Source: Octopus bimaculoides (lineage: Eukaryota). From it: a stretch of 55,509 bases of DNA. Each line of letters opens with the position of its first letter. The stretch's first letter is position 1. The stretch covers positions 138,653,487 to 138,708,995 of the forward strand of contig NC_068984.1 of NCBI RefSeq assembly GCF_001194135.2, written 5' to 3'. The notes below the pieces were generated by a model. The model was not told the origin of the DNA, did not search any database, and saw only the letters and a list, made by a program, of their open reading frames with translations. The position numbers and the translations under genes were made by a program. Shown in pieces: positions 27,538 to 53,660 of the stretch.

Positions 27538-27547
27538 NNNNNNNNNN

Positions 27548-27871: not shown

Positions 27872-28132
27872 GTCAAGACTCAACTTGAACATCCTACAAA
27901 ATACCATATTCAGCAGAAGCAAAACCAGCAAATTCAGCTGTTCTTACATGAAAAGCAAGTATCTGGATCCACAAGTGTTCCAGGAAATACACAGTCCATG
28001 CCCAATATGGTGGCACTTCAGGGTACCAATATTACCGATCAGAGTGACGTACTCCACACAGCCAGTGCTCCTTTGACTAACCCAGACAGTCCTTTACCTT
28101 TACCAGCTGTAGCAAATCCTGCTCCCACAGAT
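27872..28132 (+). CDS. MITF: MITF/TFE exon: conserved N-terminal domain ([25 protein letters not shown]...NPDSPL...PTD), 87 aa
   Basis: Matches MITF [25 protein letters not shown]; ttttccAG acceptor, GAT|GTGAGT donor, phase 0/0. Confidence 0.96.
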
Positions 28133-28179
28133 GTGAGTTTTTGTTTATTTATTTATGTTCTATGAATGCTAAATATATT

Positions 28180-29244: not shown

Positions 29245-31451
29245 TTAAGAGGGAAGTGGAATTGCAGTTGTTTATCACCTTAAGATTTTTTTAATTCAAT
29301 TCAATAGGTTGTGTCCTTTATAATTTCTTTTGACATCATGGTGGAAAGTGGAAGAGTACCTTAGGTCTAATGGGTGGTGGTGGGGAGAACTGCCGGATTG
29401 AAGAGTGTTCTATTGTTACACTAGAGACATTTAACTGTTGAATGCCATAAGAATAGAATGAAAGCAGATGTTGTATTCTATGTGTGTGTGAATGTATTCA
29501 TCTTGGATTATCTATCTGTGTATGTGGTGGGTGAATGTTTATGGTATTAAGACTACAGGAGTGGACTAAGCCTGCAGTAAATTGTTCAAAATTTCTGAGT
29601 GTTTAATGGAATAGATTAGGAAGTAGAATTAATAGTAATAATTGTAGATTCAGTGTAATCCAACTATAAGCATCTACAAATGAGAGGGCCTGTGTCCGTA
29701 TTATTAGATTTAATGGCAACACCAAAAGACATGTGACCAAATATTTTTCATTAAATATCTTTTCTATCATTTACGAAGGTTCATAGTTTACTACACAAAA
29801 GGAAAGGTTCTTTAAAATGATCAGCAGTGTATGTTACATGAGTTATTTTCTAGGCCTTGAATGCCATGAAAGATAGCTCAATAGAGAATTTCCCTCAATG
29901 CCAAGCCAGAATTCAAATAAAACAATACAGAAACCTTCTAGTATGTAATTAATTTATTCTCGGATATATTCCAATATAATGGCTATATCATGATATGGTT
30001 TAGTGCTTAGTTAAAACTTAGATTTGATAGCTCTTCATTACTTGTAAAGTCAGTATGCTTTCCTAAATAAATCTCAACCGCAGTGAAGTGAACATGTAAT
30101 GTACATGCCCAATTCCAGGTTCCCTTAACAAATTTTCATTGGTGATCTAGCAGTTGGCTCTTGGTCACATGGTGCACCAAAGAAGAAATACAAAGGACAC
30201 ACTCAAAACGACTTTAAATTAGTGTAACTTAGAACGGCCTACCTGGGAACATCTTGGCTCAAGGCCACCCACTGTGTTGTAGTGGTGTGTACTCTTGGAG
30301 TACAGAACTCAGAATCAGAAATGATTAGAGAACCTAAAGAGAGGAGGGCTGCAGGGAAGGCAAGAGCCCCACTGAGTTCTGATTTTGCTGTTACGTGTAA
30401 CCCATTGTAACCTTGGACTTTATGCCAACATTGGCTTAATAAGCCACCTCAGGACCCACAAAGTGCAAAGCTGGTAACCTGGTCATCTTCAGATACATGA
30501 AGGACATTTCATCATTAATAGGAAAAGAAATATATCAAATATGCTGAAAGTATCTNNNNNNNNNNGGGGGGGGTTACACTTAACGAAAAGAAGCATGGTC
30601 TTGAGAGCTAAGATTTCTGTATGAACTGCTTGTAGCCTTTGAAGAAATACAAGAATGCATTGAATTAATTGCACAGTTGTATGGCATCGTCAAATTAATA
30701 GAAGAAATATCAGCTCTGCATCTGTAATGTGTTGAATGCCTTCTTAAATAATGGTCTACTCAATCAGTGATTGAGATATACGTCTAATACATGGTATATC
30801 ATACAATTGTGTATATTCATTGATAGATAAAAGTATTAATCTGTGTGCAATACATTTACCATCGGTGGAGATGTTGAGAAGCTGAAAAATGTAGTTTGAG
30901 GAAGATTAAATTATTACTAAGAAAGGAATTAAATGTTTACAACATCTGGCTAGCTGTATTTACTAAGAGAACTCGGAATAGCTAATCATATTTGTATCAG
31001 CTGGCTTATTTGTCTGATAGCATAAATATTATGATGTTGGGGACTTGCTACTTAGTAAATATAGAAATTATGATTGAAGTATAGTCATTGGGGAAATAAC
31101 TGAAAACTTGATCAAAGAAGCTTAAATGTTTTAAAACAAGTTTTTAACTTAGAGATATTCAGATTATCTGTCCATTAAAGATATTACTATTGACATTAAT
31201 AAGTTTACTTTTCAGCAAATCAGAATAAATATTCATAAATGATGTATCAATTTTCTTTGTACATCAGTAAATAACATTATTTCCTATAATTTCTTCTTTG
31301 GTAGGTTGAGTATTTTTTTAATATTCAGATTTTTTACATAGACTTCCATAGTATTTTTTCTTTTTCCTTTCCGCATACCTTTTCCTATTTAAACGTGCCA
31401 TACCCAAAAAGACTTTCTGTATTTATTCTGAATTTAGAAAAATTGTATGTA

Positions 31452-31702
31452 CGGCTGGCTTGTGCGGGTGGCACATAAAAGACACCATTTCGAGCGTGGC
31501 CGTTTTCGTGCGGGTGACACGTAAAAGCACCCACTACACTCTCTGAGTGGTTGGCGTTAGGAAGGGCATCCAGCTGTAGAAACTCTGCCAAATCAGACTG
31601 GAGCCTGGTGTTGCCATCCGGTTTCACCAGTCCTCAGTCAAATCGTCCAACCCATGCTAGCATGGAAAGCGGACGTTAAACGATGATGATGATGATGATG
31701 AT
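31452..31702 (+). mobile_element. Young family C repeat with (GAT)n tail
   Basis: Nearly identical to the reverse copy at 23772-24010. Confidence 0.85.
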
Positions 31703-35028: not shown

Positions 35029-35133
35029 ATGGACAATATTTTTCCTGAAGGAATCAGTCTAGAATCTGTTGATGCTACTATAGATAATGACTTGAATCTT
35101 ATTGAGCCAACTCTTACACAATTAACATCAACG
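35029..35133 (+). CDS. MITF: MITF/TFE exon: acidic activation-domain region (MDNIFPEGISLESVDATIDNDLNLIEPTLTQLTST)
   Basis: Aligns to MITF [32 protein letters not shown]; tttttAG acceptor, ACG|GTAAGG donor, phase 0/0. Confidence 0.93.
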
Positions 35134-35189
35134 GTAAGGATCTATTCTTTCCTAAAACCTCTCTTGTATTCAGTAATCATTGTGTGTGC

Positions 35190-35229
<40 letters not shown>

Positions 35230-37187
35230 TCACCTATATATGTATTCTCTGTTTTTGTATTGAAGTATTCATAATGTCTCTTATATATGTCACTTTTAAA
35301 TCTTCATATTTCTTACCATATCTGTTTTTCATTTTCTACATTACATTTCAGAAAAAAAGTTATTTTGCACAAATAATTATCCTCCTGCTCCCCATCCCCT
35401 ACTAGCTACTGCTATATCTTTTTGTTGAAATAACTACACCCATTGATTACAAACTGGCTAATATTTCTGTTTCGCAATCTTACTGGCATTTTACATAAAT
35501 ATATGCACAGACAAAATAAGCACAAATGGCACAGTGAGGAATAAGAGATGGACAGATGGATAAAGTGAGTGATTACATTAAGCTGACAAAAATTTAGATA
35601 GTGATGGACAAAATGTAAACAAATACACACACACACACAAAATAATGAAGTTATGTACAGGGAATTGTATACTGAATAGATGAAAAAGAAAAGAAGTCAA
35701 CAGACATTTTGGGTGAACCCTTTATCAAACTAGAATAAGAAGCATGATGACAGAAAGGAAAGGAATGATACATCAAAAAAACACCTTTGTTTTATACATA
35801 TGTGTCCTTTTATGCATATGTATAAATTCAGGTGATGTGTAGTGTAGTGGGTTATTTGAAAATAATCATATTGGAATGTTATATAGCTTTTAGTTTACAT
35901 TTTAATTTATAAATTCGTTTAGTGGTTTATTGAAGCATCTTCATTATGGTATTGGTTCAATGAGTGTTTTTATCTTTCTTCTTTGATATGTATTGTTGTT
36001 TTGCTAAGAGATTTGCATTAAGTATTTTGCTTCCAAGACACCAATAGATGATTTTTATGTTATGTAGTATATCCATTGGAAGGCAGCCAAATGGAAGTAT
36101 ATGAATTAAATAAGCTAATAAGAAACTCTTGTTAGTTATATAGTACTCCAACTGCTTCTCAGAGGAGTTATGTAGATATGGCATCTTTTCACAACAATGT
36201 GACTGTATTGTGTGTGTGTGTGTGTATCTTCACATTGACACCACTTCAACAGTGATGTCTGTTTATATTCCACGTAAACAGTATATAGATAGAAAGGTAA
36301 ATAGATAGATTCATATAATTATATAATGTGATGTGAATTTAAATTGCATGAAAAGTTAACAATATTTAGAATTTCGTGAGTGTTCCTGTATAACCAATGA
36401 AAATTTGTGAGCAAGGCTCATTTTATAGTCTGAGCTTCACTTAGGTGGACTTTAAAATTGTGTAGGTCAACCTAATTTAACAGTCATTCCAGTAACTAAT
36501 ATAAAAATGCTGTTGAAAGACGATTATGAATACTAAAGATTACTAATGGAAGTTACACATTCTCTGAAGATTTGATGATGCAGTCAGCTTATAGAATTTC
36601 CTTATGTAACTGATGTATATTTATTGTCGATGAAATGTATGTAAGATGATGTAAACGAGTATTTTGCTTTGTTTTGCTTTATAATACATGCATACATACA
36701 TACATACATGCATACATACATACGTATGTGTGTGATGTAGGTGTATATGTTTGTATATACATATATATGTATATGTAAATTTGCATGTGTATATGTATAT
36801 ATGTGTGTGTGTGTGTTTATGTGTATATGTATGCATATATGTATACATTTATATGTATATATGCACACATACATACATATATACATGAGAGAAAGAGAGG
36901 GCATGCAAACATATAATTTATACATGTGTGTAAGTATGTGTTGATTATTATAGCAAATGGATGGCTATTTAGTTATAGTTGCCTTAATAATGAATGGTGT
37001 TTAAAGAAAAACAAAACAAAACAAAACCAAGTAAAACACATTGAAATATAAAGATATCTTAATTGTTTGTAGCTATTATAGTTTTCTGTTCTCAATGTAT
37101 TTTATTGTGTGCATATAGGTACGAATGCTCACAAACCTCTGTGTGCATACGTACATATGTATGTTTATCTATGTATATGTATGTATG

Positions 37188-37234
<47 letters not shown>

Positions 37235-38007
37235 TATGAATGTCAGAATATACACTCCAAAAGATGCAACAGAGGACAGCAGGTCCTCCCCAAGTAAATT
37301 CATAGCTGTCTACAGTATGTTGTAGTTAATTAATGCCTGTCGCCTCTTCTGGGTTGTCAACATAGCAATCTACTCTAAGTATGTTGCTGCTGCTGCTGCA
37401 TTAGTTAACTGATGGGGGTGAAGATGAGGGGGTTGAGAAGTGAGACAAGGAAGAAAGGTGGTGTCTTTTGTTATGGATTATGTTTTGTTATGTCTTCAAA
37501 TTTTCTTCAGTTTATCTCCGTTGGATGAAGTAGATTAGTAGGTGAAGGTGCCTATTTTATCAACACATTAAAATGCAACAACAACAGCAACAGCAACAGC
37601 AATAATGGTTATTAGAATGAAACAAGGTATCATGATAGGGAAAGAGAGAATGTCCACCTTTGTGTTTGGGAGCAGAAACATGTCAGTTATGTTAGCAAAT
37701 TAAACACTATGACCAGTATGTCAGAAAATGTCAGTTAGTTCAGAGAATATTTCCTCCAAATATCTATAAAAGTGGTTCTTTTATGCAACATTTCTAATAA
37801 CTACCTTTTGACAAGAAAAATAAATAATAAATTGTTTTGTGTGATACTTTGTTGAAATTCTCTTAAATTCCAGCAATCTTGTATACATATCTAGTAGTTA
37901 TGTTGATATGTTTGTTTTGTTCTCATTCCAGAGCATAATAAGGGACAACAAATAATTTTTTTTTTAAATAGACATTATGATAATAAATGCTACTCACAGA
38001 CAAACTC

Positions 38008-38048
<41 letters not shown>

Positions 38049-38301
38049 GCACACATACATACATACATACATATATGTTTGTGTATAAGTGTACACATAA
38101 TATTTGTAGTCAAGTAATTATTTGCACTTCATTATACTAACCATTAATGATTTCATTTTTAACTTATAATTCCATCTCAGAAATTAAAATGAAATCTAAA
38201 TTACTCTGAAATATTACTTCAAGATCTGAAATGCACACACACACACATTTCCATCTCAGAAGCAGAAAGCTAAGATTTAATGCAAACATAACAATCGATA
38301 T

Positions 38302-38352
<51 letters not shown>

Positions 38353-39039
38353 TAGATAGATAGATATTAAGTGAATAACTGAATTTCTTTTTATTTCTGT
38401 TTTTTCATATCTATCAGTATACGGTATTAAGTCTTTCATCTCTTTGGATCCTTTCTCATTCAATAGAATTATATTTGGAAAAAAAAATAATAATAATAAT
38501 AAATATATAAATAAAATTAGGTTCAACTAACTTAAGTGAATTATCATATCATTTGTTTATTTAATATTGATTTCTACTCCAACATTAAACATATTTCATT
38601 AAATATGTTTTGGCATTTTGTAGCACTATTATCAATCCAATTTATAATGTAGCTAAAGAATTATATTTTCTCCACATAGCTAGAAATTCCAGGGTTTCTT
38701 AGATGATAGGACTTCAACTGTTTCAGTAGAGAAGAGAAAAATATATGGAAAACAAAAATCAAATAAGAAAACCATATTCTTCTCTGTTCATTCTGAATTA
38801 ATTTGTCTTGTGTTTATTCCTGTGCTGACTGAAGACAATTGTCCATAGCAACAGGAATGCTCTTCAGCACGCTTACTAGAAAGTCTCAGGATTCAGAATT
38901 TTTTCTTCGTTGCCATAGTAACTAATTTTTATTCTAACCTTATTTATGTTCCACATTGTTGAATGCAGAGAGTTTGATGTTATAAAAATAGATAATTTCT
39001 TTTGCGCAGATATCAGGGTTTCTTTTTCTCTTCTAACCA

Positions 39040-39495
39040 CAGCTATAGTGCTGATCTCAGAAGCATATAAGCAGGTGGTTCTGTTAGAACTTTCTGTTCC
39101 ATGAGAGGACCACATTGAAGAGGCGCTGGTAGCACTGTGCCAAAGCAATGGGTGGAAAGCAAAATGTGAGCCCATCAAGGCAGGATGCAGAGGGATTGCA
39201 CACTAGGCTCTTTGCAGAGCTTACAGCATGCTTCACATTACAGGGGACAATAGGCAGAAAGCTATCAGATTGATTGTGGACATAGTAGAGATTGCTTCAA
39301 TGAGGCTGTGGACCAGGAGATGCAAGCTCTGGAAGGAGCAGTGCTACCAGAATATTGCTAACTGGACACAAGCTGGGGTTTGATCAATCCTGGCTTGGTC
39401 ATCCAGGTAACGGTGTGTCATGTTGAAAGATCTGAAATACTTAATAACCTTAGAAAACATCACTGATCATGTGTCCAGATGTATCATAGGATGAT
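39040..39495 (+). mobile_element. Decayed 3' end of a HERO-like restriction-endonuclease (RLE) non-LTR retrotransposon
   Basis: Frame reads IVLISEAYKQVVLLELSVP*EDHIEEA-LVALCQSNGWKAKCEPIKAGCRGIAH*ALCRAYSMLHITG...ASMRLW. The following 3'UTR (tgatcaatcctggcttggtcatccagg...aaacatcactgatcatgtgtcc) resembles HERO ends as remembered. Confidence 0.7.
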
Positions 39496-41198
39496 GTATA
39501 ATAAAACCTATATATCCTAAATAGTTGAATTTAGACTCAACTAAATCTGGGGTGGAGCATTCTGGTTACTTCAGTCAGTCTCTTGGATACATAGAGAATC
39601 TACCTACCTCTGTCACTCTTGAATACATTGAGAATCTATCTACCTAAATAATTCATATAAAATATCATATAACATATTTGAAGGCATAAAAAGACTCATG
39701 GACTTAACAAACACATCCTGATTTCAGCAACGTATTTTCAGGAAAAAATGTTTTTATTGCATTAAAGTATATAATAGGGGCCCAACTTCACATATAGGAC
39801 TTGGGGTGAATTTTTTTTTTTTTTGTTTTTTTGAGACATTTTCTTTGGAGGAAAAAAGTGCTTATGTTCCATCAAATACAATACTTTCAAAATTGTCCAA
39901 CCCAACAAAAAAAATCAGTAAAAAAAAATCTATGAATCTGCAATTTCTACTTGATTTTTCCTAATTCAAAGTATCTATCAATCACAGATTATCTATGTTA
40001 AGTTCAAATAATAGGGTATGGCAGTTTTAAAAAAATCTTGTTTTTTGTAAAGGTCTTATGTAAAGATTTTTTAAAATGTGATGGTTCTATTGGCAATTAA
40101 GCCACACTATAAACCCAGCAAAGAGCATTTGACCTACATTTACAAATCCCAACACCCTAATACATGCACTCTCATTACCTTGATATGAAAATTACAAATT
40201 AATTCATTTAAATATGTTTAAAATTCTTTTATCCATCAAATATATTTTCTCCAGTTTAGTTATAACCATGTTGGGACAGTAGTTTTTGTTTGTTTGTTTG
40301 TTGCATAATGTCTTTTCTTTCGTTAATAGCAATGACTGATCTACATTTCTTGTAGCAGCTTATAGATAGTTAACCTGGGTTGTTAGAAATAAATTTCTTC
40401 GAAACCCTTATCCAAAATTCTTCTCATAAATGTTCCTCATACACTAATATCCATAGCAACACACAAATTCACATAAAAAATCTTGCAGACCAAATACAAA
40501 AATGAAATGGAATATGTTTATTTTTATAAGTATTTTTAAAATTATAAATTTCTTCTACAACCATCATAACCCCGTACACTATTACAAAACATAAATAAAC
40601 TGTTTAATCTAGTTTATTATTTAAACAAAAATATAATGTAACACTTTTATTTCTAACATTCTGACTGCTGTTGTTATTTATTTATTATGTATCCTTATTT
40701 TATTAACACACTCTACCGCGTACATGTCAGTGTATGTAAGTGTTTGTTGAGCACATTACTTGTAACCTTAATAATAATGCTTAGCAAACAGCAACAATTA
40801 ACATTAAAGTTTCTTTTATATAATTCTTAAACAGTCATAGTAAAAAAAAAAAAAAAAAGATATTTCTCATCAACTTAAAGTTGATGTAAAAAGCTCTTAA
40901 GGTTAATAATATTAAAAAAAAATTTCATGTTGATTAGCAAATAACAAATTTTTAACAAAAAATTACTTCAAATGAACTAAAATATCTCAGCTTTTATTAT
41001 TGAATTATGCTCAAACTAAACAGCGTTGTTAATATTTATGATGAGTAATAAATAACATGTAAACATATTGCCTGAAGTTTCAAGGAGTGTTAAAATGGAA
41101 AGAAAACACTGCTGCCCTGATAAACTTCCTTTCTCAATCCATTCTAAGTTATAAGTATATTGGTATATTTAAAGGGTCATTCACATGTGATTAACAAT

Positions 41199-41283
41199 TG
41201 GGAAAATATGGATGCACACTTCATTGATTTTAACAAGGCATTCAACTCTCAGCCAGACACGAGAGTTTATAATAAGGTAAAAA
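41199..41283 (+). mobile_element. Remnant of a CR1/L2-type reverse transcriptase
   Basis: ENMDAHFIDFNKAFNSQPDTRVYNKV resembles the RT motif (V/I)D.IYLDF.KAFD.VPH.RL..KL. Confidence 0.5.
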
Positions 41284-41806
41284 TTATCTTTTGGATTGCT
41301 CCCTCTAATTCACTCTTCCCATATATTCTAAAAACTATCCTTAATAACTTTTCTCTCAATGATACAGAGCAGTATCTTTTATAAATATATATTATACTAA
41401 TAAATAACACACGATAGTAATTCTCTGGTAAATATCCAAGTAAGTTATTAAAAATGTTATTTCACTTTATTTATTTATATACTGTATAATATTAGAGATA
41501 TATGAAATAGATAAATGACTTTGGTTCTTAGAGTGAAGACTGTTTTTAGACCTAAGGTTTAGAATATGCAAATTAACATTGGAAATCTGAAGAATTTGAG
41601 AAAATTTGATTTAATACTTTAAACTAGAATTGGTGAAACTATTGCATTAAGCTAGAATTGAAGAATATTTTTGCAAATTCTTCTGGAATAAACCAATCAG
41701 AAATTAAAAAATGAGTTATGCTTCCACTATGAAGAAGTCATTAGGTTGATATTAATGACAATGAAATATTTATATTATCAGAATATCTCTGTTATACACC
41801 TACTGC

Positions 41807-41849
<43 letters not shown>

Positions 41850-41863
41850 GTCATCATCATCAA

Positions 41864-42054
41864 AGTGGCGAGTTGGCAGAATTGTTAGCACATCGGGCGA
41901 AATGCTAAGTCGTGTTTCATCTGCTGCTATGTTCTGAGTTCAAATTCCGACAAGGTCGACTTTGCCTTTCGTCCTTTTGGGGTCGATAAATTAAGTACCT
42001 AATTGACTGGCCTCTTTCTCCAAAATTTCAGGCCTTGTGCCTATAATAGAAAGG

Positions 42055-42060
<6 letters not shown>
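41864..42060 (+). mobile_element. SINE family B between (ATT)n tracts
   Basis: Matches family B; ends gaaaggattattatt. Confidence 0.8.
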
Positions 42061-42099
<39 letters not shown>

Positions 42100-42159
42100 G
42101 TTATTATTATTATTGTTATTTAGTACATTTGGTATACTAGTGTTTGTTTTTAAGGTTTA

Positions 42160-42556
42160 NNNNNNNNNNNNNNNNNNNNNNNNNNNNNNNNNNNNNNNNN
42201 NNNNNNNNNNNNNNNNNNNNNNNNNNNNNNNNNNNNNNNNNNNNNNNNNNNNNNNNNNNNNNNNNNNNNNNNNNNNNNNNNNNNNNNNNNNNNNNNNNNN
42301 NNNNNNNNNNNNNNNNNNNNNNNNNNNNNNNNNNNNNNNNNNNNNNNNNNNNNNNNNNNNNNNNNNNNNNNNNNNNNNNNNNNNNNNNNNNNNNNNNNNN
42401 NNNNNNNNNNNNNNNNNNNNNNNNNNNNNNNNNNNNNNNNNNNNNNNNNNNNNNNNNNNNNNNNNNNNNNNNNNNNNNNNNNNNNNNNNNNNNNNNNNNN
42501 NNNNNNNNNNNNNNNNNNNNNNNNNNNNNNNNNNNNNNNNNNNNNNNNNNNNNNNN
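42160..42556. other. Assembly gap (397 N)
   Basis: Run of N. Confidence 0.99.
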
Positions 42557-42651
42557 NTATATATATATAGATTCAGATGTATATGGTACTTGAGTTGAGG
42601 AACCAGAATTTAGTATGGTATTATCCATACAATTTTAAAATAATCACCTTA

Positions 42652-42716
<65 letters not shown>

Positions 42717-42778
42717 GGATTTTGTGATGAGATAAAGAACCAAGGCTGTGTATAATATAGAACATTTATAAATAGAAG

Positions 42779-42826
42779 GTCTTACAGCTGTTTCCAGGAT
42801 ATTTATTATATCCCTTCATCGGAGAC
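42779..42826 (-). ncRNA. Hammerhead motif with a single core variant (CCGAUGA)
   Basis: Minus strand: GUCU CCGAUGA A G GGAUAU aauaa AUAUCC UG GAAA C AGCU GUA / AGAC; perfect 4-bp stem I and 6-bp stem II. Confidence 0.6.
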
Positions 42827-43335
42827 GGTATGAGAGGATGGTTAAGCAATAGTTAGTTTACTTAAGATAGGAAACTGAGTGAATGTAGGGATATTGTATT
42901 TGTAAATATATATATATATATATATAATATATAGGTAGGTATATAGATATATAAAGAATAATGCTCTTTTTATCATTGAGAATACTGGATCGAATGCATC
43001 AGATTGCTAACATTCCTCCCCCCTCGAACCTCCATAACAAATTCAATGCTATTTAACTTCCTCTGTAATCTTGCTGGATATCTCAATTCACAGACATGCT
43101 TGGCTTACCTGCATGTTTCAAAGGAAAGTAAAATTCCACCCAACTTGCTGCTAATTCTCTCTAAATTCTCTTTCTCTCCCTGCAACTATACTTCGTTTAG
43201 TTGATCGTTTGCTATCCTGTAATGAGTCTAAATTAAACCTGAATCATTATTATTCTGTTGAGCTGCAGAACATTTTGCCTCTACATAAATATAAATATCT
43301 AAAAATGTCTGTCTCTGACTTTCTATTCTTTTTTT

Positions 43336-43375
<40 letters not shown>

Positions 43376-43410
43376 CTATACATCCATACACATATATATG
43401 TATATATATA

Positions 43411-43468
<58 letters not shown>

Positions 43469-44100
43469 CACATACACACATTTTCATATACACATATATA
43501 TATCTATTCACACACATATATACATAATCTTATCCATTCCAGCAACACTAACATACTGGCTGTGAGAATGCTTCTCTTGCATTTTGCAAAGAATGTATTT
43601 TTTTGGAGATGTGAGATTATTATTTTTCTTTATATTAATATTTTATTCCTTTATTTCTGCAGTAAAATGTTCTTTAATTATTCAAAAATTTCTTATAATT
43701 TTTTTTTTTCTATATCTTTGTTTCAAGATGAAAATGAAAAATTAAATGAAAAATAAAACAGTGAAAATTTCACAAGAAATCATTCTTTTCTGAAATATTC
43801 TATGCATGAAATGATGTTCTTTTCTTATTTTAACCATCTCCTCCCTCTTTATTATTATAGCGCCTTCAGCTGCCAAATGGTTCCTTTCAAAATTGTTCCT
43901 CTTGTGTCCTTTCTGGGTTCAAGCTTGTTTCTCTTCAAGCTCTATGAGTGATGTCTTCTTTAGTTCATCCACCATATCATTACCCCATCATCATTTTATT
44001 TATTTAATCAGTTCATCTCATAACATGGTTGTATATGGTTATGTTGATGAGTTTTATCCTTGCCGCTCATCAACTGTTTGATGCACAGAATTTGCTAACA

Positions 44101-44575
44101 GTCATGGCACTGTGTGGTAAGAAGCTTGCTTCTCAACCACATGGTTCCAGGTTCAGTCCCACTGCATATCACCTTGGGCAAGTGTCTTCCACTATAGCCT
44201 TGGAGCAACCAAAGCCTTGTGAGTGGATTTGGTAGGTGGAAACTGAAGGATTCCATTGTGTATATCTGTATGTATATATGTATGTATGTATGTGTGTGTT
44301 TGTGAATATGTACATGTATGTATGTGTGTGTGCTGTTGTCTCCTTGTCTTGACATCACATAATAGTTGTAAACAAGTATTACTGTCATACAAGCAGTGAC
44401 CTTCATTTTCAATCTACCATGAAAACATGTCTGACCATGAAGAATATTACCTTGTTTGGAAACAATGACAGGAAGGGCATCCAGCTGTAGGAAAATCTGT
44501 CTCCATAATTCTGTCTGACCCATGCAAGCATGGAAAAGTAGACATTACATGATGACGATGATGATGATGATGACG
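44101..44575 (+). mobile_element. SINE with family A head and family C-like (RTE-type) tail ending in (GAT)n
   Basis: Head as family A; tail acaggaagggcatccagctgtag...catgcaagcatggaaaag...gatgatgatg. Confidence 0.75.
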
Positions 44576-45943
44576 ATAATGTGTATAACTGTTATGCTAG
44601 AGCTCTGAATTTCCAAATGAAACCACTCCTGAAACATTTTAAAAGATATTAAAGTGTTGGCTTTATAGCAAAGAAAAGTACTCATAATGTTTAACATTTA
44701 CAATAAGTAGCTAATAAGATTTTTAAGATCAATACATGTGTCTTAAGGAATGGGAAAAAATCTGAAATTATGGGTGTTGTCTTTCTTGAAGTTCACATCA
44801 CCACCCTGTACACAAACGCACTGTGTGAATTTCCTCTAGTGTAATGTACTCTTGTACAATAAATGGCAACAAGTGAACTTAAAATTATTTCTTGACATAA
44901 AAAATAATATATTGTGCTGTTATTTGTTGGTGTGAATTATGGATATTATAAACCACCCACTACGCACATATATATATAATTGATCATCATCATCATCATT
45001 TGGAAACGTGGGTGTTTCATTCAGCATCCTTAAACAACCCCTATTCAGGGACCTTTTGAGCGGGATGGGCTACTCGGCCTGAAGAAAATTCTAACTGTGC
45101 CCCACCTGCGAGGTCATGCGCTGTTAATCTTGATATGAGATCACCGTGTCGCTCACATATGTTTTTAATGCATGTGCCTGGTGTACCCTCATCAAACGGG
45201 TTGTCATGATGGGTAAACTGGGCTTCATATATTTTACCCCAGTGTCACTTTCATGGTATGCACTGTTATTTCACTCAATAATAATAATAATAATAATAGT
45301 AATAATAAACACCACTCTTGACAGCTCTTTTCCATGCTTGCATGGATCAGACAGAATTTGTTGAAGAAGATTTTCTACAGCCAGGTGTCCATCTTGTGTC
45401 CAACCCTCACCTCTTTCCAAGGAAGGTAATATTTCCTCATGGCCAGATATGTTTTCCACAGAAGACTGAAAACTACATCGCCCGTATAACAGTGAGGCTC
45501 ATTTACAACCAAGACAACAGCAAACACACGCACACACACACATGCATGCATTCAACAGGTTTCTTTCAGTTTCTGGCTATCAAATCTTTGGGGCTGTAGT
45601 GTACACTACATGTAAACTGTTTTCTTACATGACTCTCTTGTGTTTCATTAAAGAATATATTTGATTGTTTCTGAAAGAAATATGCTTCAATAAGTTGATC
45701 CTTTTGTTTTTTGGGTTTTTTTCCAGTCATATTATTGCTTCTATACACTGTTGTTTAGAGAAGGCATGAATAACAGTAAAAAATTGATACGTTATCAACA
45801 ACAATTGAACTCTAACCTCAGATCTCACAATGTCATAACAATGTCATTAATTGTCAATTACCAGTTATGCTGCTTGATGTCACTAATTTAATACAATGTA
45901 GATTATAACAAAAGAACAGCTTAAATATTAGGAGAGAGTATCT

Positions 45944-46162
45944 TTAACCCTTTAGCATTTAAACCGGCCATATCCGGCCAAAAGTATTCTGCCTATTCTA
46001 TGTTCAAACTGGCCAGATCTGGTCTCTCACACAAACCCTACAATATCATTTTAAAAATTAACAGCTACCTCATCAAAATCTCATAGCTACATGATTACTT
46101 CAAAACAATGTGGATAAAAAAGCATTAATTATGGCAGAATAATGTGAACACTAAAGGGTTAA
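45944..46162. mobile_element. piggyBac-type MITE family E
   Basis: TTAA-CCCTTTAGCATTT...AACACTAAAGGG-TTAA. Confidence 0.85.
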
Positions 46163-46244
46163 AGATCCTGAGGTGAGACTCTTACAAATGAGGAAATTCT
46201 TAATAGGGTCATGACTACTGGCTGGCCACGTGTTCTGTCTTGCC

Positions 46245-46478
46245 CAGCGGTTCTCAACTGGGGCCCAAATAAGATTTCATTGTTAAAATTTATGCGCAGT
46301 AAATTGGTTATATTTCTACATTACACAAAATATTTTAATAATTTTTTTAATACAATTCCTAATAATATTTAATCATGAAAATATAATGGGAGTTTTTAGA
46401 CATCAAATGGGTATGGAAATTCTGAGTAAAATAAGATTCAAAGAGATCCGTAAATAAAAACATAGTAGAGAACCACTA
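46245..46478. mobile_element. hAT (Charlie/Buster-type) MITE
   Basis: TIRs CAGCGGTTCTCAAC / GTAGAGAACCACTA; flanking 8-mers gtcttgcc / gtctagct match at 6/8 and resemble the NTCTAGAN target. Confidence 0.7.
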
Positions 46479-46537
46479 GTCTAGCTTGTCGTTGGCACTG
46501 GAATACAGCCATGGTTTGGGTGCTATTTTATGGCAGG

Positions 46538-46700
46538 CATAAATGAGGCTGGCCAAGGATTACTTGGTGACAGACATTAGAAGATGACCTGAACAGAGTC
46601 AACGTTACATAGAATGGATGTGCAACAGCAGCAGCTGATCAAACCCAATGGAGGGAGTTTGTTGCCCAACATGCTGAGCAGTGCAGGAAGAGCTCAAGCT
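46538..46700 (+). mobile_element. RTE-clade LINE C-terminal remnant
   Basis: HK*GWPRITW*QTLEDDLNRVNVT*NGCATAAADQTQWREFVAQ corresponds to the RGRPR.TW...A.DR..WR motif; two stops are CGA-to-TGA changes. Confidence 0.65.
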
Positions 46701-48329
46701 CAGACTTATAACTAGGACATTCATGCGATGGAAACTTCTGGAAAATGACACAATTACTTTTTACAGAAAAATGTTTGTGCAGAATAGGAACTTTGTAAAG
46801 GAATTTGATAAATGCAAAATAATCAGTGATATGATAATGCAATTTTTAGATTATGTACTGAGTTATGGTTTGTATTTACTGTAAATATAGAATTTTAGAA
46901 ATATATGGCTTAGATTTCTTTGAAGAACGTTTATATCTAGTTTACTGTATTACTATGAGATCATAAAAGTAACCAAATATGGATAGCTGTATAAATTATC
47001 AGAGCAGTTCTTTCATAATTCGACATACCTCATCATTATTATTTTACATACACTTTCCAAGCTGACATGGCTTGATAGTCATTACTGCTCTTTTAGAAGT
47101 GTGTGTGTCTGTATATGTTTGTCCCAGTCACTACTGTTGGACAACTAGTGTTGGTTTGTTTATATCCGATATTAGTGGTTCAGCAAAAGAGTCAACAGAT
47201 TAAGTACCAAACTTAAAAGATAAGCACTTGGGTTAAAATTTGTTTGACTAAACCCTTTAAGGTGGTATCCCAGTATGGCCACAGTCTAATGGATGAAACA
47301 ACTAAAAGATAAACAATACAACTGTCAGACAATTCTCTCTGAATTCATGAATTGTCTTACCAAAGCATTCTGTACTGTCTGATCTGAAAGCTAATGTCTA
47401 AAAATAAATCTGAAACAAAATGTTCATCGTTAGAATTCTCTAAAACAATGTTAGAATTATATCATAATGAAATATAAATTGCTGTCTTTCTATAATTAAA
47501 TCCATTCATTGAAATATATAAATAAAGATAATTATCATAAGATTTTAATTGGGTCACATTACAATTAATTGATTCATTTAGTTGAATATGTACTTCACAG
47601 TAAAACCTCCAGAATTATAGAAATAATATCATTTAGATGTGGTACACAAATTTCATTTTTGTATTTAGCCTCTTTCTTTTAGTTTCTGAGATCAAATTCC
47701 ATATAGGTCAGCTTTCTCATTTATTCGTTTGGGTTTGATAAAATAAGGTATTGGGCAGAATGTGTGTGTGTGCATGCATTTCTCCATTTATGTCCCTGAA
47801 GCTTAGCAGCTCAACAAAAGTATCTGATAAAACAAGTACCAAACTTTGTTCAACTAAAATCCTTCAAAGTGGTGCCCCAGTATGGCCACAGTCAAATGAC
47901 TGAAACAAATAAATGGAGAACTTTGTCCAATTGTCTATTTATTGTGTTTGCTTTTTCACTCCATAATCTTGTCTCTTGTTTTCATCTTACTATTTTCCCC
48001 TTTTACATTCTGCTTTTCTGTTTATACATCTGTTCATGTTTCTTTCTTTCTCCTTCTAAATTTCTCTCCCACATCTTCTCTGATCTTCATCTCTATTTCA
48101 GCATCATTGAAAATTCTAATCACATGTACATGTTCCTTTACCATTGTTATTTAATCATTATAAATGTGTCTGTGTGTGAATATATATTTTCAAGGCAGAA
48201 TTCTGAAACTTGCCGTCTTATCTTCCACTCCAAACACAGAAGTTAACTGGTATGAAAGATAACCTAATTTTGTATGGCACAAGAAAAGTTTTCAACTGTT
48301 TTTGTTACTCTGTCCCTGCTTTTGATTGC

Positions 48330-48379
<50 letters not shown>

Positions 48380-48894
48380 ATAACAAAGAATGAATATAGC
48401 ACAACTTTGTAATTAGTTACAATTGTTTCTGTACCATTCCATTTTTAACCACATTGCATCAAAATGATTTTGAGTGAAAAGGTACCCAGACTGTTGTGAG
48501 GTCATTTTTTTTCTTTTGTAGCACCAGTGTTGTCTCATCCATGGCAACACTAAGGAATCTGGTCTTCCCTACACCTCTTTTCTGTACTGTTTCTACATGT
48601 TCATTCCTTTCTTTCTTACACAACTGAGAGGAGCCAGAGTGGGACTATGAAAAGATTAAAAGAAGAGATGAACCAGAGTGATAGGAGCAAGAGGATGATG
48701 GAAGAGAGGGAGTGAAAGAAAGAGAGGGTGTAATAAGCAGCTACATGATGTTGGTTGGTAAGGAGGTTGAATTAAAACAGCATGAGAATTGTAATGGCAA
48801 AGGGAGAAAGTATTAGGTGGCAGACAGATTGATAGGAGTATTAGAAGTAAAAAAGTGTGATGGATGTCAACAATAAGTGAAAGAGGAGGAAATG

Positions 48895-48928
<34 letters not shown>

Positions 48929-49486
48929 AATTAATGGCTTGCAATAGAGATGGGTGATAATAAGAAGGGTTTGCAAAGAGACGTTCAATGTGATACAATC
49001 CCTTGTTACACAACCAACATGATGGAAGAAGCTGAAGTGTTTTAGTGAGACACATCGGAGTCTATCTTGCTTGAGAAACTACATCTGCCTGCTTCTATGT
49101 ACTCTTATTTTTCTTCAAACATGTGTTTATCTCAACACATAGCTTTTTGCATGTCTCTATTTCTCTATAATAATAATAATAATGCTGCTTGTTTGATTTA
49201 ATATATAATCACAGAAATATGAATGTTTTTGATTTTCTTATATGTTTCTCAAAATATATATTTTAATGCATAAATATGTGTATTTAGGATAATGTTATGT
49301 ATTAAGGTTGTAAAAATTCATGTATACTATTAATTTGAAAGTTTATGTGTGTGTGTGTGTCTGTGTATACACTCATCCACATACCCATTTACCATTTACC
49401 TCAAATATATAGTTGTATATATATATATCCATCTATTGTTTTCATAATCGGTCATAATGTCTCGCGTTTAAGATGATTCCCATGCT

Positions 49487-49570
49487 TTCCCTGATGAGAA
49501 GGTTACAATTTTAATATCAAAGATCCCTATGGATCACACAGGTTGTAATCCTTTGAAACATATGTAGGAA
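49487..49570 (+). ncRNA. Type-I hammerhead ribozyme, intact catalytic core, sense to the MITF pre-mRNA
   Basis: UUCC CUGAUGA G-AAGG-UUACAAU [32-nt loop containing GAUCC-cuau-GGAUC] GUUGUAA-u-CCUU-U GAAA C AUAU GUA / GGAA. Predicted cleavage after 49566. Confidence 0.8.
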
Positions 49571-49770
49571 TAAAGTATGCAATTATAACATGCGTTTTCT
49601 CCATTCCTTAAATTCTTAAATATACTCAAATACCCAAAATTTCAAGGAGTTCCTGCCTTAAAAACAGGAACTAAACCACAGTTATTTTGTGTTCTTTGCT
49701 ACATTGGTTTCTATTAACCCATTTATTCTATCAGAAGAATTTTTATTCATTAAGATAGAAGAAATACACA

Positions 49771-49802
<32 letters not shown>

Positions 49803-50660
49803 ATGTGCACGTGTATATGTTATTTATATGTATATCTGTGTTTATGTGCATACATAGGTATATATAATCCCATTATGGTGACAAAGAATGAATTTAGCCC
49901 ATGTTTATTAGTAGTCATAATTGTTTTGACATCACTCCGTTTTTCTAATCATTGCACATAAATGATTTTATGAGAAAAGTTACTCAATATTTGTGGTTAA
50001 TTACATTGGAGTGGTACTTCATCAGGCTTGAATCAAAAGGTTCACTATAAGCATACATTCATTCACTCACATAAAGATATAAATATATTTTCAGAGAAAT
50101 AGGCATTTACATGGACACACACATAGTCAGCAGTTTAATTATCAAAATGACAGGGAAGTTGAAATCCTCATATCCTGATTTTGGTGAAGTTCCATTCTAT
50201 ATTTATCCAAAGAATATTTACCAAACTCAACTCATGGTCATATGAACCATTATTAGCATCAAGTTGAGCTTGCTTCGATTTGCTCAATATGCTACCTCTT
50301 TTTCATCTTGTATAGCATTTGGGAAGTCAATAGAGCAACATATTGTGTTCATAAAAAAAAAAATAGACGACAAAGGTTTTTTTCTGAACTTCTTAACCCA
50401 TGTACAACCATGTTGAGATGTTCATATGAAAGACATTTAAACACATTTATATATCTTAGCAAAGATATATCACTTCCAGTCAAAATGAACACTCAAACAC
50501 ACACTTCCACATGCATGCACACATATATATAACAAGTTTGTATTATATTTGGTGACACAATTGGACAACCCATTGTATGTTTTCAGAGTGTAAAATATTC
50601 ACAGTATATGTTTGTGTATAATGTTTGTATGTATAATTTGTTATCCTTCTCTATTTAAAG

Positions 50661-50835
50661 CTTCCTCAAACAAGTGTTCTGAACCTCTATGATCAACACA
50701 CAGAAAATAGCAAATCAATAACCTCTGTACCAAATGCTTTTCGGATTAAGGCAGCTGATCCACCACAATTCCTCAACGAGGATGAGGCTAGACAGTGGGC
50801 AAAAGACCGACAGAAAAAGGATAACCATAATTTGA
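50661..50835 (+). CDS. MITF: MITF/TFE exon: 14-3-3-site region plus start of basic region (LPQTSVLNLY...TSVP...EDEARQWAKDRQKKDNHNL)
   Basis: RQKKDNHN is the MiT signature; aaAG acceptor, A|GTAAGT donor, phase 0/1. Confidence 0.97.
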
Positions 50836-52452: not shown

Positions 52453-52528
52453 TTGAACGGAGAAGAAGGTTTAATATCAATGACAGAATTAAGGAACTTG
52501 GAACACTCCTACCCAAAAACAGTGACCC
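52453..52528 (+). CDS. MITF: MITF/TFE exon: basic region-helix 1-loop ([26 protein letters not shown])
   Basis: Near identity to MITF; ttttcAG acceptor, CC|GTAAGT donor, phase 1/2. Confidence 0.99.
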
Positions 52529-52818: not shown

Positions 52819-52966
52819 TGACACCCGACAGAATAAAGGTTCCATTTTAAAGAATTCCGTGGACTATATTCGAAGACTTAGAAAAGATCAAGATAAAATG
52901 CACAACCTTGAAGAAAAAAATAGATTGTCAGAGACAAACAACAGAAAACTTATGCTAAGAGTACAG
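52819..52966 (+). CDS. MITF: MITF/TFE exon: helix 2 and leucine zipper (DTRQNKGSILKNSVDYIRRLRKDQDKMHNLEEKNRLSETNNRKLMLRVQ)
   Basis: Aligns to MITF [20 protein letters not shown]...LLLRIQ; ctgcAG acceptor, CAG|GTAAGT donor, phase 2/0. Confidence 0.99.
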
Positions 52967-53396: not shown

Positions 53397-53660
53397 CATT
53401 TGGAAATGTTGTGTAAGTCTCACGGAATATCAACAGGTCTCCCTAACGACAGCAGTAGCTTGGCAGTCTTTGCAGATCTTCTCACACCACCTTGTGGAAA
53501 ATCCGATACAGATTTGCTTTTGGACCAAGTCAATAATGGTTTTTCCTCTGTTGGTAGCAGTGCTATGGACGAAGACAGCTCACCTGTCAGCGGAGATCCC
53601 ATGATGTCATCAAATCCCGTCAGTCCATCAATGGATGAAGATGATGACGAACTCATGTAA
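53397..53660 (+). CDS. MITF: MITF/TFE terminal exon (HLEMLCKSHG...DEDSSPVSGDPMMSSNPVSPSMDEDDDELM*)
   Basis: Continues the zipper (MITF ELEMQARAHG) and carries the SPV..DP..SS C-terminal motif; ttttacAG acceptor, TAA stop. Confidence 0.96.
   Translation, partial: HLEMLCKSHGISTGLPNDSSSLAVFADLLTPPCGKSDTDLLLDQVNNGFSSVGSSAMDEDSSPVSGDPMMSSNPVSPSMDEDDDELM

What the first reader, a model, noticed from the sequence alone, without database searches (positions are those of the whole stretch)
49487..49570. Intact sense-strand hammerhead ribozyme inside the MITF intron, 1.1 kb before the DNA-binding exon
Seen: all invariant core nucleotides are present (CUGAUGA, GAAA, GUA cleavage triplet). Stem I is a perfect UUCC/GGAA. 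Stem II has about 12 pairs with one bulge and a nested GAUCC/GGAUC hairpin in its loop. Stem III is the palindrome ACAUAUGU. Known: minimal type-I hammerheads with palindromic stem III occur in Penelope-like elements and retrozymes and cleave as dimers; intronic self-cleaving ribozymes are known from amniote RECK and mammalian CPEB3. Inference: co-transcriptional cleavage of this 15.5-kb intron could tune MITF output or yield transcripts lacking the bHLH-ZIP. The long stem II is atypical, so activity in vivo is uncertain.
Basis: partly seen in the sequence, partly recalled or inferred. Interest (0 to 1): 0.85.

Follow-up and report, generated by a model that had tools for sequence, protein, structure and literature searches.

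The report
Lone hammerhead ribozyme motif in MITF intron
A complete-looking hammerhead self-cleaving RNA motif does sit on the sense strand of a cephalopod MITF intron, but it is a lone, atypical copy of a kind that is very common in invertebrate genomes, and nothing found here shows that it cuts or regulates the gene.

Summary
At 49487-49570 (+) the sequence reads UUCC|CUGAUGA|helix II|GAAA|CAUAUGU|A|GGAA, a type I hammerhead with every core nucleotide. Helix I has 4 bp. Helix II has 14 bp, one bulged U and a nested GAUCC/GGAUC hairpin. Helix III is 2 bp plus a palindromic AUAU loop. The gene context is also right: MiT/TFE (MITF) exons lie on the + strand, the intron is 15,527 nt, and the cleavage site is 1,095 nt before the exon that starts the basic region.

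It is the only descriptor match in the window. In 342 Mb of shuffled sequence there were 112 basic matches, and none had a helix II this long.

Three caveats apply. The most conserved helix pair, 10.1-11.1, is G·U rather than G-C. No Rfam hammerhead model detects the motif, even at E<=10 on 99 nt. Only 0.4% of the predicted monomer ensemble leaves the core free.

There is no second copy or partner within 55 kb and no reverse transcriptase remnant nearby. The palindrome alone would dimerise at about 12 µM.

The best reading is a solo relic of a Penelope-like or retrozyme hammerhead that is functionally neutral. The regulatory idea is unsupported. Orthologous introns could not be obtained.

The parts
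49487..49490 (+). Helix I, 5' strand (UUCC)
   Evidence: Pairs with GGAA at 49567-49570.
49491..49497 (+). Catalytic core C3-A9 (CUGAUGA)
   Evidence: Read directly. It is one of 26 CTGANGA sites in the window and the only one that completes a hammerhead.
49498..49554 (+). Helix II: 14 pairs (5 + bulged U49549 + 9) starting with G10.1.U11.1. The distal loop carries a nested hairpin, GAUCC 49522-49526 / GGAUC 49531-49535.
   Evidence: Predicted in every fold. Pairs were checked. A helix II this long was not reached in 342 Mb of shuffles.
49555..49557 (+). Catalytic core G12 A13 A14
   Evidence: Read directly.
49558..49565 (+). Helix III: palindrome ACAUAUGU (A15.1-U16.1 and C15.2-G16.2 plus an AUAU loop in a monomer; an 8-bp duplex in a dimer)
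   Evidence: Forming the 2-bp hairpin costs +1.1 kcal/mol. The self-duplex is -7.0 kcal/mol.
49566..49566 (+). A17. The predicted cleavage is 3' of this base (GUA triplet).
   Evidence: Its position follows from the hammerhead numbering. No cleavage was demonstrated.
49567..49570 (+). Helix I, 3' strand (GGAA)
49481..49579 (+). Possible extension of helix I (CAUGCUUU 49481-49488 with AAAGUAUG 49572-49579, in competition with the 4-bp register)
   Evidence: Present in the MFE and core-unpaired folds. It is not statistically remarkable: 6% of shuffles and 12% of genomic pairs are as stable.
49437..49774 (+). The 338-nt, 31% G+C segment that carries the motif. It lies between (TA)n microsatellites at 49416-49427 and 49775-49802 and is a candidate solo insertion unit.
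   Evidence: The segment has no similarity to anything else in the window. Its fold z-score is -2.0. Its status as an insertion unit is inference.
35134..50660 (+). Host intron of the MiT/TFE (MITF) gene, 15,527 nt
   Evidence: tblastn with Acanthosepion pharaonis MITF, plus splice-site reading.
50661..50835 (+). Downstream exon (LPQTSVLNLYDQ...DEARQWAKDRQKKDNHNL), the start of the basic region
   Evidence: The acceptor is ttaaag|C at 50660/50661 and the donor is A|gtaagt at 50835/50836.

Best explanation
This is a solo copy of a type I hammerhead of the retroelement kind, the sort carried by Penelope-like elements and non-LTR retrozymes. It lies by accident in the sense orientation inside a long MITF intron.

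Shown: its anatomy is that of the class. [quoted passage not shown] Hammerheads of this class work when two copies pair through the palindrome.

Also shown: here there is only one copy, the helix that normally starts with G-C starts with G.U, and there is no sign of the loop-loop or pseudoknot contacts that make monomers fast.

Inferred: in the MITF pre-mRNA it cleaves very poorly or not at all and has no effect on MITF expression. It is a neutral passenger, probably old. The U at 11.1 would be a decayed CpG, and no other copy or coding partner is left nearby.
For: - Full core and helices are present.
- The motif is far better than chance for one window.
- It matches published features of metazoan and PLE hammerheads: short helix I, enlarged helix II, a bulged nucleotide in helix II in the Drosophila-type variants, and a small palindromic helix III (PMC4209133). 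A 2-bp helix III plus tetraloop is typical of invertebrate hammerheads (PMC7229834).
- The carrier segment is 338 nt at 31% G+C. That falls within the 150-450 bp, low-GC range of non-LTR retrozyme units.
- The segment lies between two (TA)n runs. Some PLE clades have an insertion bias for microsatellites, although the cited paper shows this for Naiad and Chlamys elements, which lack hammerheads.
- The window has CpG o/e of 0.29 and TpG/CpA of 1.31, so C11.1pG12 to U11.1pG12 is the expected decay (inference).
- Cephalopod genomes are known to hold hundreds of hammerheads and Penelope elements (PMC6962438).
- In Xenopus about 44% of retrozyme copies lie in introns.
- Against activity or function: no second hammerhead in 55.5 kb; dimer Kd about 12 uM; only 0.4% of the monomer ensemble leaves the core free; no loop 2-flank complementarity above chance; single minimal motifs are inactive in vitro; intron cleavage by a hammerhead did not impair splicing.
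Against: - No other member of a repeat family was found. Nothing in the window resembles the segment, although at least 70 other repeat pairs recur in the window.
- No protein-database ORF matches any of the segment's six frames.
- No RT or GIY-YIG remnant lies within about 4 kb upstream or 1 kb downstream of the motif.
- So a retroelement origin is inferred from architecture and priors, not shown.
- Helix II (14 bp plus a nested hairpin) is longer than the 6-8 bp described for PLE hammerheads.
- The conserved unpaired nucleotide between A9 and 10.1 and the G10.1-C11.1 pair of that class are absent.
- Rfam models do not score the motif.
- Invertebrate retrozyme hammerheads with a 2-bp helix III can cleave efficiently as monomers, so inactivity is not proven.
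Confidence: 0.62

Rival explanations
1. The motif is an active self-cleaving ribozyme as a monomer. It cuts the MITF intron co-transcriptionally, but with little or no selected consequence.
For: - The core is complete and the GUA site is a good substrate.
- Natural hammerheads tolerate even a U-U mismatch at 10.1-11.1 (PMC3088659).
- Invertebrate retrozyme hammerheads with a 2-bp helix III plus tetraloop cleave efficiently as single motifs (PMC7229834).
- Helix II is very stable.
Against: - Forming the 2-bp helix III costs +1.1 kcal/mol, and the core is sequestered in the MFE. The core-free fraction of the ensemble is 0.4%.
- Helix II is 14 bp, so the canonical loop 1-loop 2 contacts (helix II 4 bp, helix I 6 bp) cannot form.
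- No pseudoknot signal was found.
- PLE-type minimal motifs were inactive as monomers and weak as dimers.
Confidence: 0.15
2. It is a chance look-alike. An ordinary AT-rich intronic hairpin happens to be flanked by CUGAUGA and GAAA and by short complementary tetramers. It has no ribozyme ancestry.
For: - The specified information is modest: 6 + 4 core bases, a 4-bp helix I and a 2-bp helix III.
- Basic descriptor hits occur at about 0.018 per shuffled window, which would be hundreds per Gb-sized genome.
- Long hairpins are up to 4 times commoner in the real window than in random sequence.
- The helix I extension is not significant.
- Rfam does not see the motif.
- G.U sits at the most conserved pair.
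- No relatives were found.
Against: - No shuffle in 342 Mb combined a helix II of 14 pairs with the rest. Only 1 of 112 basic hits had 13 pairs, 4 of 112 had a fully palindromic helix III and 21 of 112 a compact one. The joint expectation is of order 0.01 to about 1 per genome.
- Cephalopod genomes hold hundreds or more genuine hammerheads.
- The palindromic loop 3 and the bulged helix II are features of real metazoan hammerheads that my descriptor did not require.
Confidence: 0.13
3. It is a selected, gene-specific intronic ribozyme, analogous to the amniote RECK/HH9, C10orf118/HH10 or mammalian CPEB3 ribozymes. On this reading it modulates MITF pre-mRNA processing upstream of the bHLH-ZIP exons.
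For: It is in the sense orientation, lies in a long intron just before the DNA-binding exons, and has a complete core. Conserved intronic hammerheads exist in amniotes (PMC3088659).
Against: - No match to the HH9 or HH10 models.
- The architecture is of the dimer-dependent retroelement type, not the stable monomer with a pseudoknot seen in the RECK and C10orf118 ribozymes.
- It is a lone copy.
- The motif is bounded by microsatellites, like an insertion.
- Hammerhead cleavage within an intron left splicing unaffected in the one in vivo test cited.
- Sense orientation has a 50% prior.
- Conservation is untested.
Confidence: 0.05
4. It is an intronic box C/D snoRNA. UGAUGA would be the C box and UUCC/GGAA the terminal stem.
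For: Weak sub-threshold Rfam hits to two C/D snoRNA families: Afu_328 at 15.7 bits (gathering score 70) and DdR12 at 14.1 bits.
Against: There is no CUGA D box before the 3' strand of the terminal stem. The scores are far below gathering. The position before UGAUGA is C, not a purine. The motif is 1.1 kb from the 3' splice site.
Confidence: 0.01

Closest known systems
Minimal and atypical type I hammerheads of Penelope-like elements (Cervera & de la Pena 2014, PMC4209133)
   Same: Type I topology and a full core. Short helix I (4 bp). Enlarged helix II with a bulged nucleotide, as in the Drosophila virilis-type variant. A small palindromic helix III that implies action as a dimer. Not captured by standard models.
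   Different: Helix II has 14 pairs plus a nested hairpin, against 6-8 bp. There is no unpaired nucleotide between A9 and 10.1. The 10.1-11.1 pair is G.U rather than the conserved G-C. The motif is not inside a recognisable pLTR or next to an RT/GIY-YIG ORF. It is a single copy in 55 kb.
Non-LTR retrozymes of metazoans (Cervera & de la Pena 2020, PMC7229834; bioRxiv 10.64898/2026.07.22.740005)
   Same: A low-GC unit of about 340 nt carrying one type I hammerhead whose helix III is 2 bp plus a tetraloop. 'Solo' monomer copies and intronic copies are described for this family.
   Different: There is no tandem repetition here. The canonical 4-bp helix II / 6-bp helix I loop-loop architecture is absent. 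No family consensus or other copy is available to show membership.
Conserved intronic hammerheads HH9 (RECK) and HH10 (C10orf118) of amniotes and mammals (Perreault et al. 2011, PMC3088659)
   Same: A sense-strand hammerhead inside an intron of a protein-coding gene.
   Different: Those ribozymes are monomer-active, are stabilised by tertiary or pseudoknot contacts, are conserved across orders and are recognised by their own Rfam models. None of this is met or shown here.
Newt / salamander satellite 2 and Schistosoma Sm-alpha hammerheads
   Same: Type I, with a weak palindromic helix III. The amphibian ones are efficient only as dimers.
   Different: Those occur in very large tandem arrays that supply the partner copy, and they keep the canonical loops 1 and 2.

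Membership tests
Hammerhead ribozyme (general consensus) | Core nucleotides C3 U4 G5 A6 N7 G8 A9, G12 A13 A14, A15.1-U16.1, and H17 at the cleavage site | tested here: met
   CUGAUGA 49491-49497, GAA 49555-49557, A49558-U49565, A49566.
Hammerhead ribozyme (general consensus) | Three helices around the core in the correct order (type I: helix I open) | tested here: met
   Helix I 4 bp, helix II 14 bp, helix III 2 bp (monomer) or 8 bp (dimer). All pairs verified.
Hammerhead ribozyme (general consensus) | G10.1-C11.1 pair, the most conserved pair after 15.1-16.1 | tested here: not met
   It is G49498.U49554, a wobble pair. The conservation is stated in PMC3088659 and PMC4209133. G10.1 itself is retained.
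Hammerhead ribozyme (general consensus) | Recognition by an Rfam hammerhead covariance model (Hammerhead_1, _3, _II, HH9, HH10) | tested here: not met
   No hit at gathering score. No hit at E<=10 in 301 nt, in 99 nt, or among the 150 best-scoring of 196 matches listed for the whole window.
Hammerhead ribozyme (general consensus) | Site-specific self-cleavage giving 2',3'-cyclic phosphate and 5'-OH ends | not testable with these tools
   This needs in vitro transcription or end mapping. The thermodynamic proxy gives a core-free ensemble fraction of 0.4%.
PLE-type minimal/atypical hammerhead | Short helix I (2-5 bp), enlarged helix II, and palindromic 15.2-16.2 / loop 3 | tested here: met
   4 bp, 14 bp, and C-G plus AUAU respectively, compared with the description.
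PLE-type minimal/atypical hammerhead | Conserved unpaired nucleotide between A9 and 10.1 | tested here: not met
   In the best register G49498 pairs with U49554. The alternative register with G bulged breaks helix II after 4 pairs (my reading).
PLE-type minimal/atypical hammerhead | Located in the pseudo-LTR of an element encoding RT + GIY-YIG, or close to a second copy (tandem or <50 kb) | tested here: not met
   There are no RT or endonuclease Pfam hits in the 10 open fragments tested between 45.3 and 50.5 kb. There is no second hammerhead in the window. Only about 49 kb upstream and 6 kb downstream are visible.
PLE-type minimal/atypical hammerhead | Member of a multi-copy consensus family in the same genome, with covariation | not testable with these tools
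   No cephalopod genome is in the searchable collections. The indirect attempts failed.
Non-LTR retrozyme | Tandem repeats of 150-450 bp, each with a type I hammerhead | tested here: not met
   A single 338-nt unit between (TA)n runs, with no repeat of it. Only a 'solo' copy would fit.
Conserved gene-embedded intronic hammerhead (HH9/HH10-like) | Conservation at the orthologous intron position across species | not testable with these tools
   The cuttlefish MITF locus is not on record. No genomic relatives were retrieved.
Conserved gene-embedded intronic hammerhead (HH9/HH10-like) | A stable monomeric fold with tertiary or pseudoknot stabilisation | tested here: not met
   Helix III is marginal at +1.1 kcal/mol. 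Loop 2-flank complementarity is not above chance: 26% of shuffles reach it.

The most novel reading that the evidence does not exclude
The motif is a lineage-specific, selectively maintained intronic hammerhead of the cephalopod MITF gene. In vivo it would cleave as a monomer stabilised by its unusually long helix II, or with a protein or RNA partner. It would control how much full-length bHLH-ZIP mRNA is made. This would be the first conserved gene-embedded hammerhead outside amniotes, and in a master regulator of pigment-cell and lysosomal programmes.
Probability: 0.04. Interest if true: 0.8.

Novelty: new member of a known kind. Interest (0 to 1): 0.22.

Why it matters
If it is only a solo retroelement hammerhead, it matters little. 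Such motifs number hundreds to more than a hundred thousand per genome in several animal genomes surveyed in the cited papers, and many lie in introns. It would add one atypical example, with a very long helix II and G.U at 10.1-11.1, that standard covariance models miss. That is a reminder that Rfam-based counts of hammerheads in cephalopod genomes are lower bounds.

It would matter much more if the motif proved conserved at this intron position and active. Gene-embedded hammerheads with a possible regulatory role are so far known only from amniotes, and MITF is a key developmental regulator.

Tried and rejected
1. Rfam at gathering score and at E<=10 on 55.5 kb, 301 nt and 99 nt. There was no hammerhead family. 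The whole-window list is microsatellite-driven miRNA noise.
2. Orthologous or paralogous DNA.
   - The look-up of encoding contigs for the cuttlefish MITF (P0002) and for the ORF just downstream of the motif: not on record.
   - A metagenome scan with the core plus the base of helix II: 5 unrelated chance hits, one of which looks like a repeat array.
   - A protein-database search with all six-frame peptides of the 330-nt segment: nothing.
   - A search with the exon-plus-flank peptide, meant to catch genomic ORFs of relatives: nothing.
Ten stop-free fragments gave no RT or GIY-YIG hits.
4. The helix I extension as extra evidence: rejected, because it is not significant.
5. A loop 2-flank pseudoknot: rejected, because it is not above chance.
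6. The box C/D snoRNA reading: rejected, because there is no D box.
7. tRNA-derived SINE context: ARAGORN finds no tRNA-like sequence in the window.
8. A full dimer energy evaluation with intermolecular helix III was not possible in nearest-neighbour notation, because the structure is pseudoknotted (64 crossing pairs). Only the isolated palindrome duplex was evaluated.

Full report
**What is there.** The stretch 49487-49570 on the + strand reads UUCC CUGAUGA G-AAGG...CCUU-U GAAA CAUAUGU A GGAA. In hammerhead numbering:
- Helix I is U49487-C49490 paired with G49567-A49570.
- C3-A9 is 49491-49497.
- Helix II runs from G10.1 (49498) to U11.1 (49554).
- G12-A14 is 49555-49557.
- Helix III is A15.1 (49558) to U16.1 (49565).
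- The cleavage-site nucleotide is A17 (49566).

Helix II has 14 pairs: 5, then a bulged U49549, then 9, three of them G.U. Its distal loop holds a 5-bp hairpin, GAUCC/GGAUC at 49522-49535. All pairs were verified by script. Helix III is the palindrome ACAUAUGU. In a monomer it is only A-U and C-G closing an AUAU loop. In a dimer it is an 8-bp intermolecular helix.

**Gene context.** The best protein relatives of the window's exons are a Logan transcript (82% identity) and MITF of the cuttlefish Acanthosepion pharaonis (80%), both with a bHLH Pfam domain. The window is therefore from a cephalopod. tblastn with the cuttlefish protein, plus reading of the splice sites, places exons on the + strand at about 27998-28160, 35029-35133, 50661-50835, 52453-52528, 52819-52966 and 53397-53660, the last including the stop. 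The motif lies in the 15,527-nt intron 35134-50660, in the sense orientation. It is 1,095 nt before the exon that encodes ...DEARQWAKDRQKKDNHNL, the start of the basic region.

**Is it more than chance?**
- A descriptor scan required CUGANGA, GAAA, helix I of at least 4 bp, helix II of at least 4 bp, A15.1-U16.1 with at least 2 pairs in helix III, and H17. It finds this site and no other on either strand.
- Of 400 dinucleotide-preserving shuffles, 9 had any hit and none was as good.
- In 6,274 shuffles (342 Mb of duplex DNA) there were 112 basic hits. Helix II lengths fell off roughly two-fold per added pair. One hit reached 13 pairs and none reached 14. 21 of 112 had a compact helix III and 4 of 112 a fully palindromic one.
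- The apparent extension of helix I (CAUGCUUU/AAAGUAUG) is not significant: 6% of shuffles and 12% of real genomic pairs are as stable.
- Long hairpins are at most about four-fold commoner in the real window than in random sequence, and most of the excess is microsatellite.
- Taken together, a look-alike of this quality is expected at about 1e-5 or less per window, and at very roughly 0.01 to 1 per cephalopod-sized genome. This extrapolation is mine.
- Cephalopod genomes contain at least hundreds of Rfam-detectable hammerheads: 235 Hammerhead_1 hits in the giant squid (PMC6962438). A true hammerhead ancestry is therefore much likelier than coincidence, but coincidence is not excluded. I give it about 0.13.

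**What argues for caution.**
- No Rfam 15 hammerhead model reports the site, at gathering thresholds or at E<=10 on 301 nt or on 99 nt.
- This is partly expected. The approximately 57-nt helix II is a large insertion relative to those models, and the Penelope-type minimal motifs were themselves found only with a dedicated descriptor. It is still a failed membership test.
- Thermodynamically, the monomer's MFE (-22.2 kcal/mol for 49481-49579) pairs CCUGAUG with CAU...AGG.
- The best core-free structure is -19.0 kcal/mol, and core-free structures make up 0.4% of the ensemble.
- Closing the 2-bp helix III costs +1.1 kcal/mol.
- In the 330-nt context the GAAAC-AUAUGU region prefers downstream partners.
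- Nearest-neighbour models ignore the tertiary core, so this is indicative only.

**What kind of hammerhead.** Cervera & de la Pena describe metazoan type I hammerheads as having a helix III of 1-2 bp capped by a 2-4-nt palindromic loop. This blocks efficient cleavage by a monomer and allows it in a dimer. [quoted passage not shown] The present motif fits that description closely. Three features do not fit: an even longer helix II, no unpaired base between A9 and 10.1, and G.U at 10.1-11.1.

The U at 11.1 precedes G12. The canonical C11.1-G12 is a CpG, and the window is strongly CpG-depleted (o/e 0.29) and TpG/CpA-enriched (1.31). The deviation is therefore what methyl-CpG decay of an old copy would produce. 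That is inference.

The motif sits in a 338-nt, 31% G+C segment bounded by (TA)n runs at 49416-49427 and 49775-49802. Non-LTR retrozyme units are 150-450 bp and of low GC. A microsatellite insertion bias is reported for some PLE clades, though the cited paper shows it for Naiad and Chlamys elements, which lack hammerheads. With 37 such TA runs in the window, the flanking pattern has a post-hoc chance of a few per cent, so it is suggestive and no more.

**What is missing for a retroelement assignment.**
- Self-comparison shows at least 70 repeat pairs of 120 nt or more in the window, from several interspersed families. None touches 49300-49900.
- Ten open fragments between 45.3 and 50.5 kb gave no reverse transcriptase or GIY-YIG hit.
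- Attempts to reach other cephalopod DNA all failed, because the searchable nucleotide collections hold no cephalopod genomes.
- Family membership is therefore inferred from architecture and from how hammerheads are distributed in animal genomes. It is not demonstrated.

**How it most likely works, or does not.**
- Hammerheads of this architecture need a partner copy. There is none within 49 kb upstream or 6 kb downstream.
- The isolated palindrome duplex is -7.0 kcal/mol, a Kd of about 12 uM. At nanomolar pre-mRNA levels less than 0.1% would be dimeric.
- Single minimal motifs showed no detectable cleavage, and dimeric constructs cleaved weakly and mostly at non-physiological Mg2+.
- The canonical loop 1-loop 2 contacts require a helix II of about 4 bp and cannot form here.
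- No alternative pseudoknot stands out.
- On the other side, invertebrate retrozyme hammerheads with a 2-bp helix III can be fast as monomers, and U-U at 10.1-11.1 is tolerated in nature. I therefore keep about 0.15 for 'active but inconsequential'.
- Even if it cleaves, a hammerhead placed in an intron left splicing efficiency unchanged in vivo. Only a much faster HDV ribozyme abolished splicing (Dye et al. 2006 and Bentley and co-workers, as summarised in PMC2995048).
- The proposed tuning of MITF output, or production of bHLH-ZIP-less products, therefore has no support here.

**Comparison and novelty.** Functionally and structurally, this is closest to the Penelope-like-element and retrozyme type I hammerheads. 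It is not like the conserved, monomer-active HH9 and HH10 ribozymes of amniote introns. If its ancestry is confirmed, it is a new and atypical member of a known kind. In Xenopus about 44% of retrozyme copies overlap introns, so an intronic copy is ordinary, and sense orientation is a coin flip. The interesting reading is a conserved cephalopod MITF ribozyme. The data here do not exclude it, because conservation could not be tested, but I put it at about 4%.

**Verdict.** The regulatory inference is unsupported. Interest is low to modest at 0.22. The decisive tests are a genome-wide copy search and an alignment of the orthologous intron, followed by a monomer/dimer cleavage assay.

Noticed in passing
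window 4296-4645, 23774-24125, 31455-31693, 19961-20103; also 8714-9282 vs 17891-18484, 9975-10220 vs 17901-18141, 17473-17713 vs 45067-45307: Several interspersed repeat families, 120-600 nt at 70-92% identity and in both orientations, recur 3-10 times within the MITF introns. Their spurious ORFs share peptides such as FYLFQSFDCGHAGAPPLVEQ and LQSDLAEFLQLDALPNANHSESVVG. ARAGORN finds no tRNA-like head.
   Followed up: partly
window 16244-16253, 17463-17472, 21329-21892, 27538-27547, 30556-30565, 42160-42557: Assembly gaps (runs of N). Two are large (564 and 398 nt) and both lie next to CA/TG or TA microsatellites. The window is therefore from a gapped draft scaffold, and the intron length of 15,527 nt includes one 398-nt gap of nominal size.
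   Followed up: no
whole window: CpG is strongly depleted (o/e 0.29) while GpC is at expectation (1.02) and TpG/CpA is in excess (1.31). This is consistent with germline methylation of this gene body.
   Followed up: partly
window 49649-49671: A perfect 7-bp hairpin, GUUCCUG-CCUUAAAAA-CAGGAAC, lies 80 nt downstream of the hammerhead, inside the same TA-bounded segment. It was picked up only as a weak terminator-like piece of a bacterial sRNA model. Its function is unknown, and it may be part of the same inserted unit.
   Followed up: no
window 6220-6400, 36680-36890, 43380-43480 and other microsatellites: CA/TA-rich microsatellites give many sub-threshold Rfam hits to repeat-derived miRNA families (mir-297, mir-466, mir-3149, mir-1277), up to 67.7 bits against a gathering score of 90. 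These are artefacts of low complexity, not miRNA genes.
   Followed up: no
P0002 (Acanthosepion pharaonis MITF), C-terminal ~55 residues: The public cuttlefish MITF model ends in low-complexity sequence (NFFSTSSFFFFFFLPFLSLSLSLSLSL...) in place of the conserved SSPVSGDPMMSSNPVSPSMDEDDDEL tail that is present in the window and in transcript P0001. It looks like a mis-annotated last exon that reads into a microsatellite.
   Followed up: no
L002 (metagenome contig Ga0124853_1113318) 1431-1494: The chance hit to the search pattern lies in what looks like a direct-repeat array: CTTTGAAACCCCGCCCTGATGA recurs at about 70-nt spacing, which is CRISPR-like. It is unrelated to the finding.
   Followed up: no
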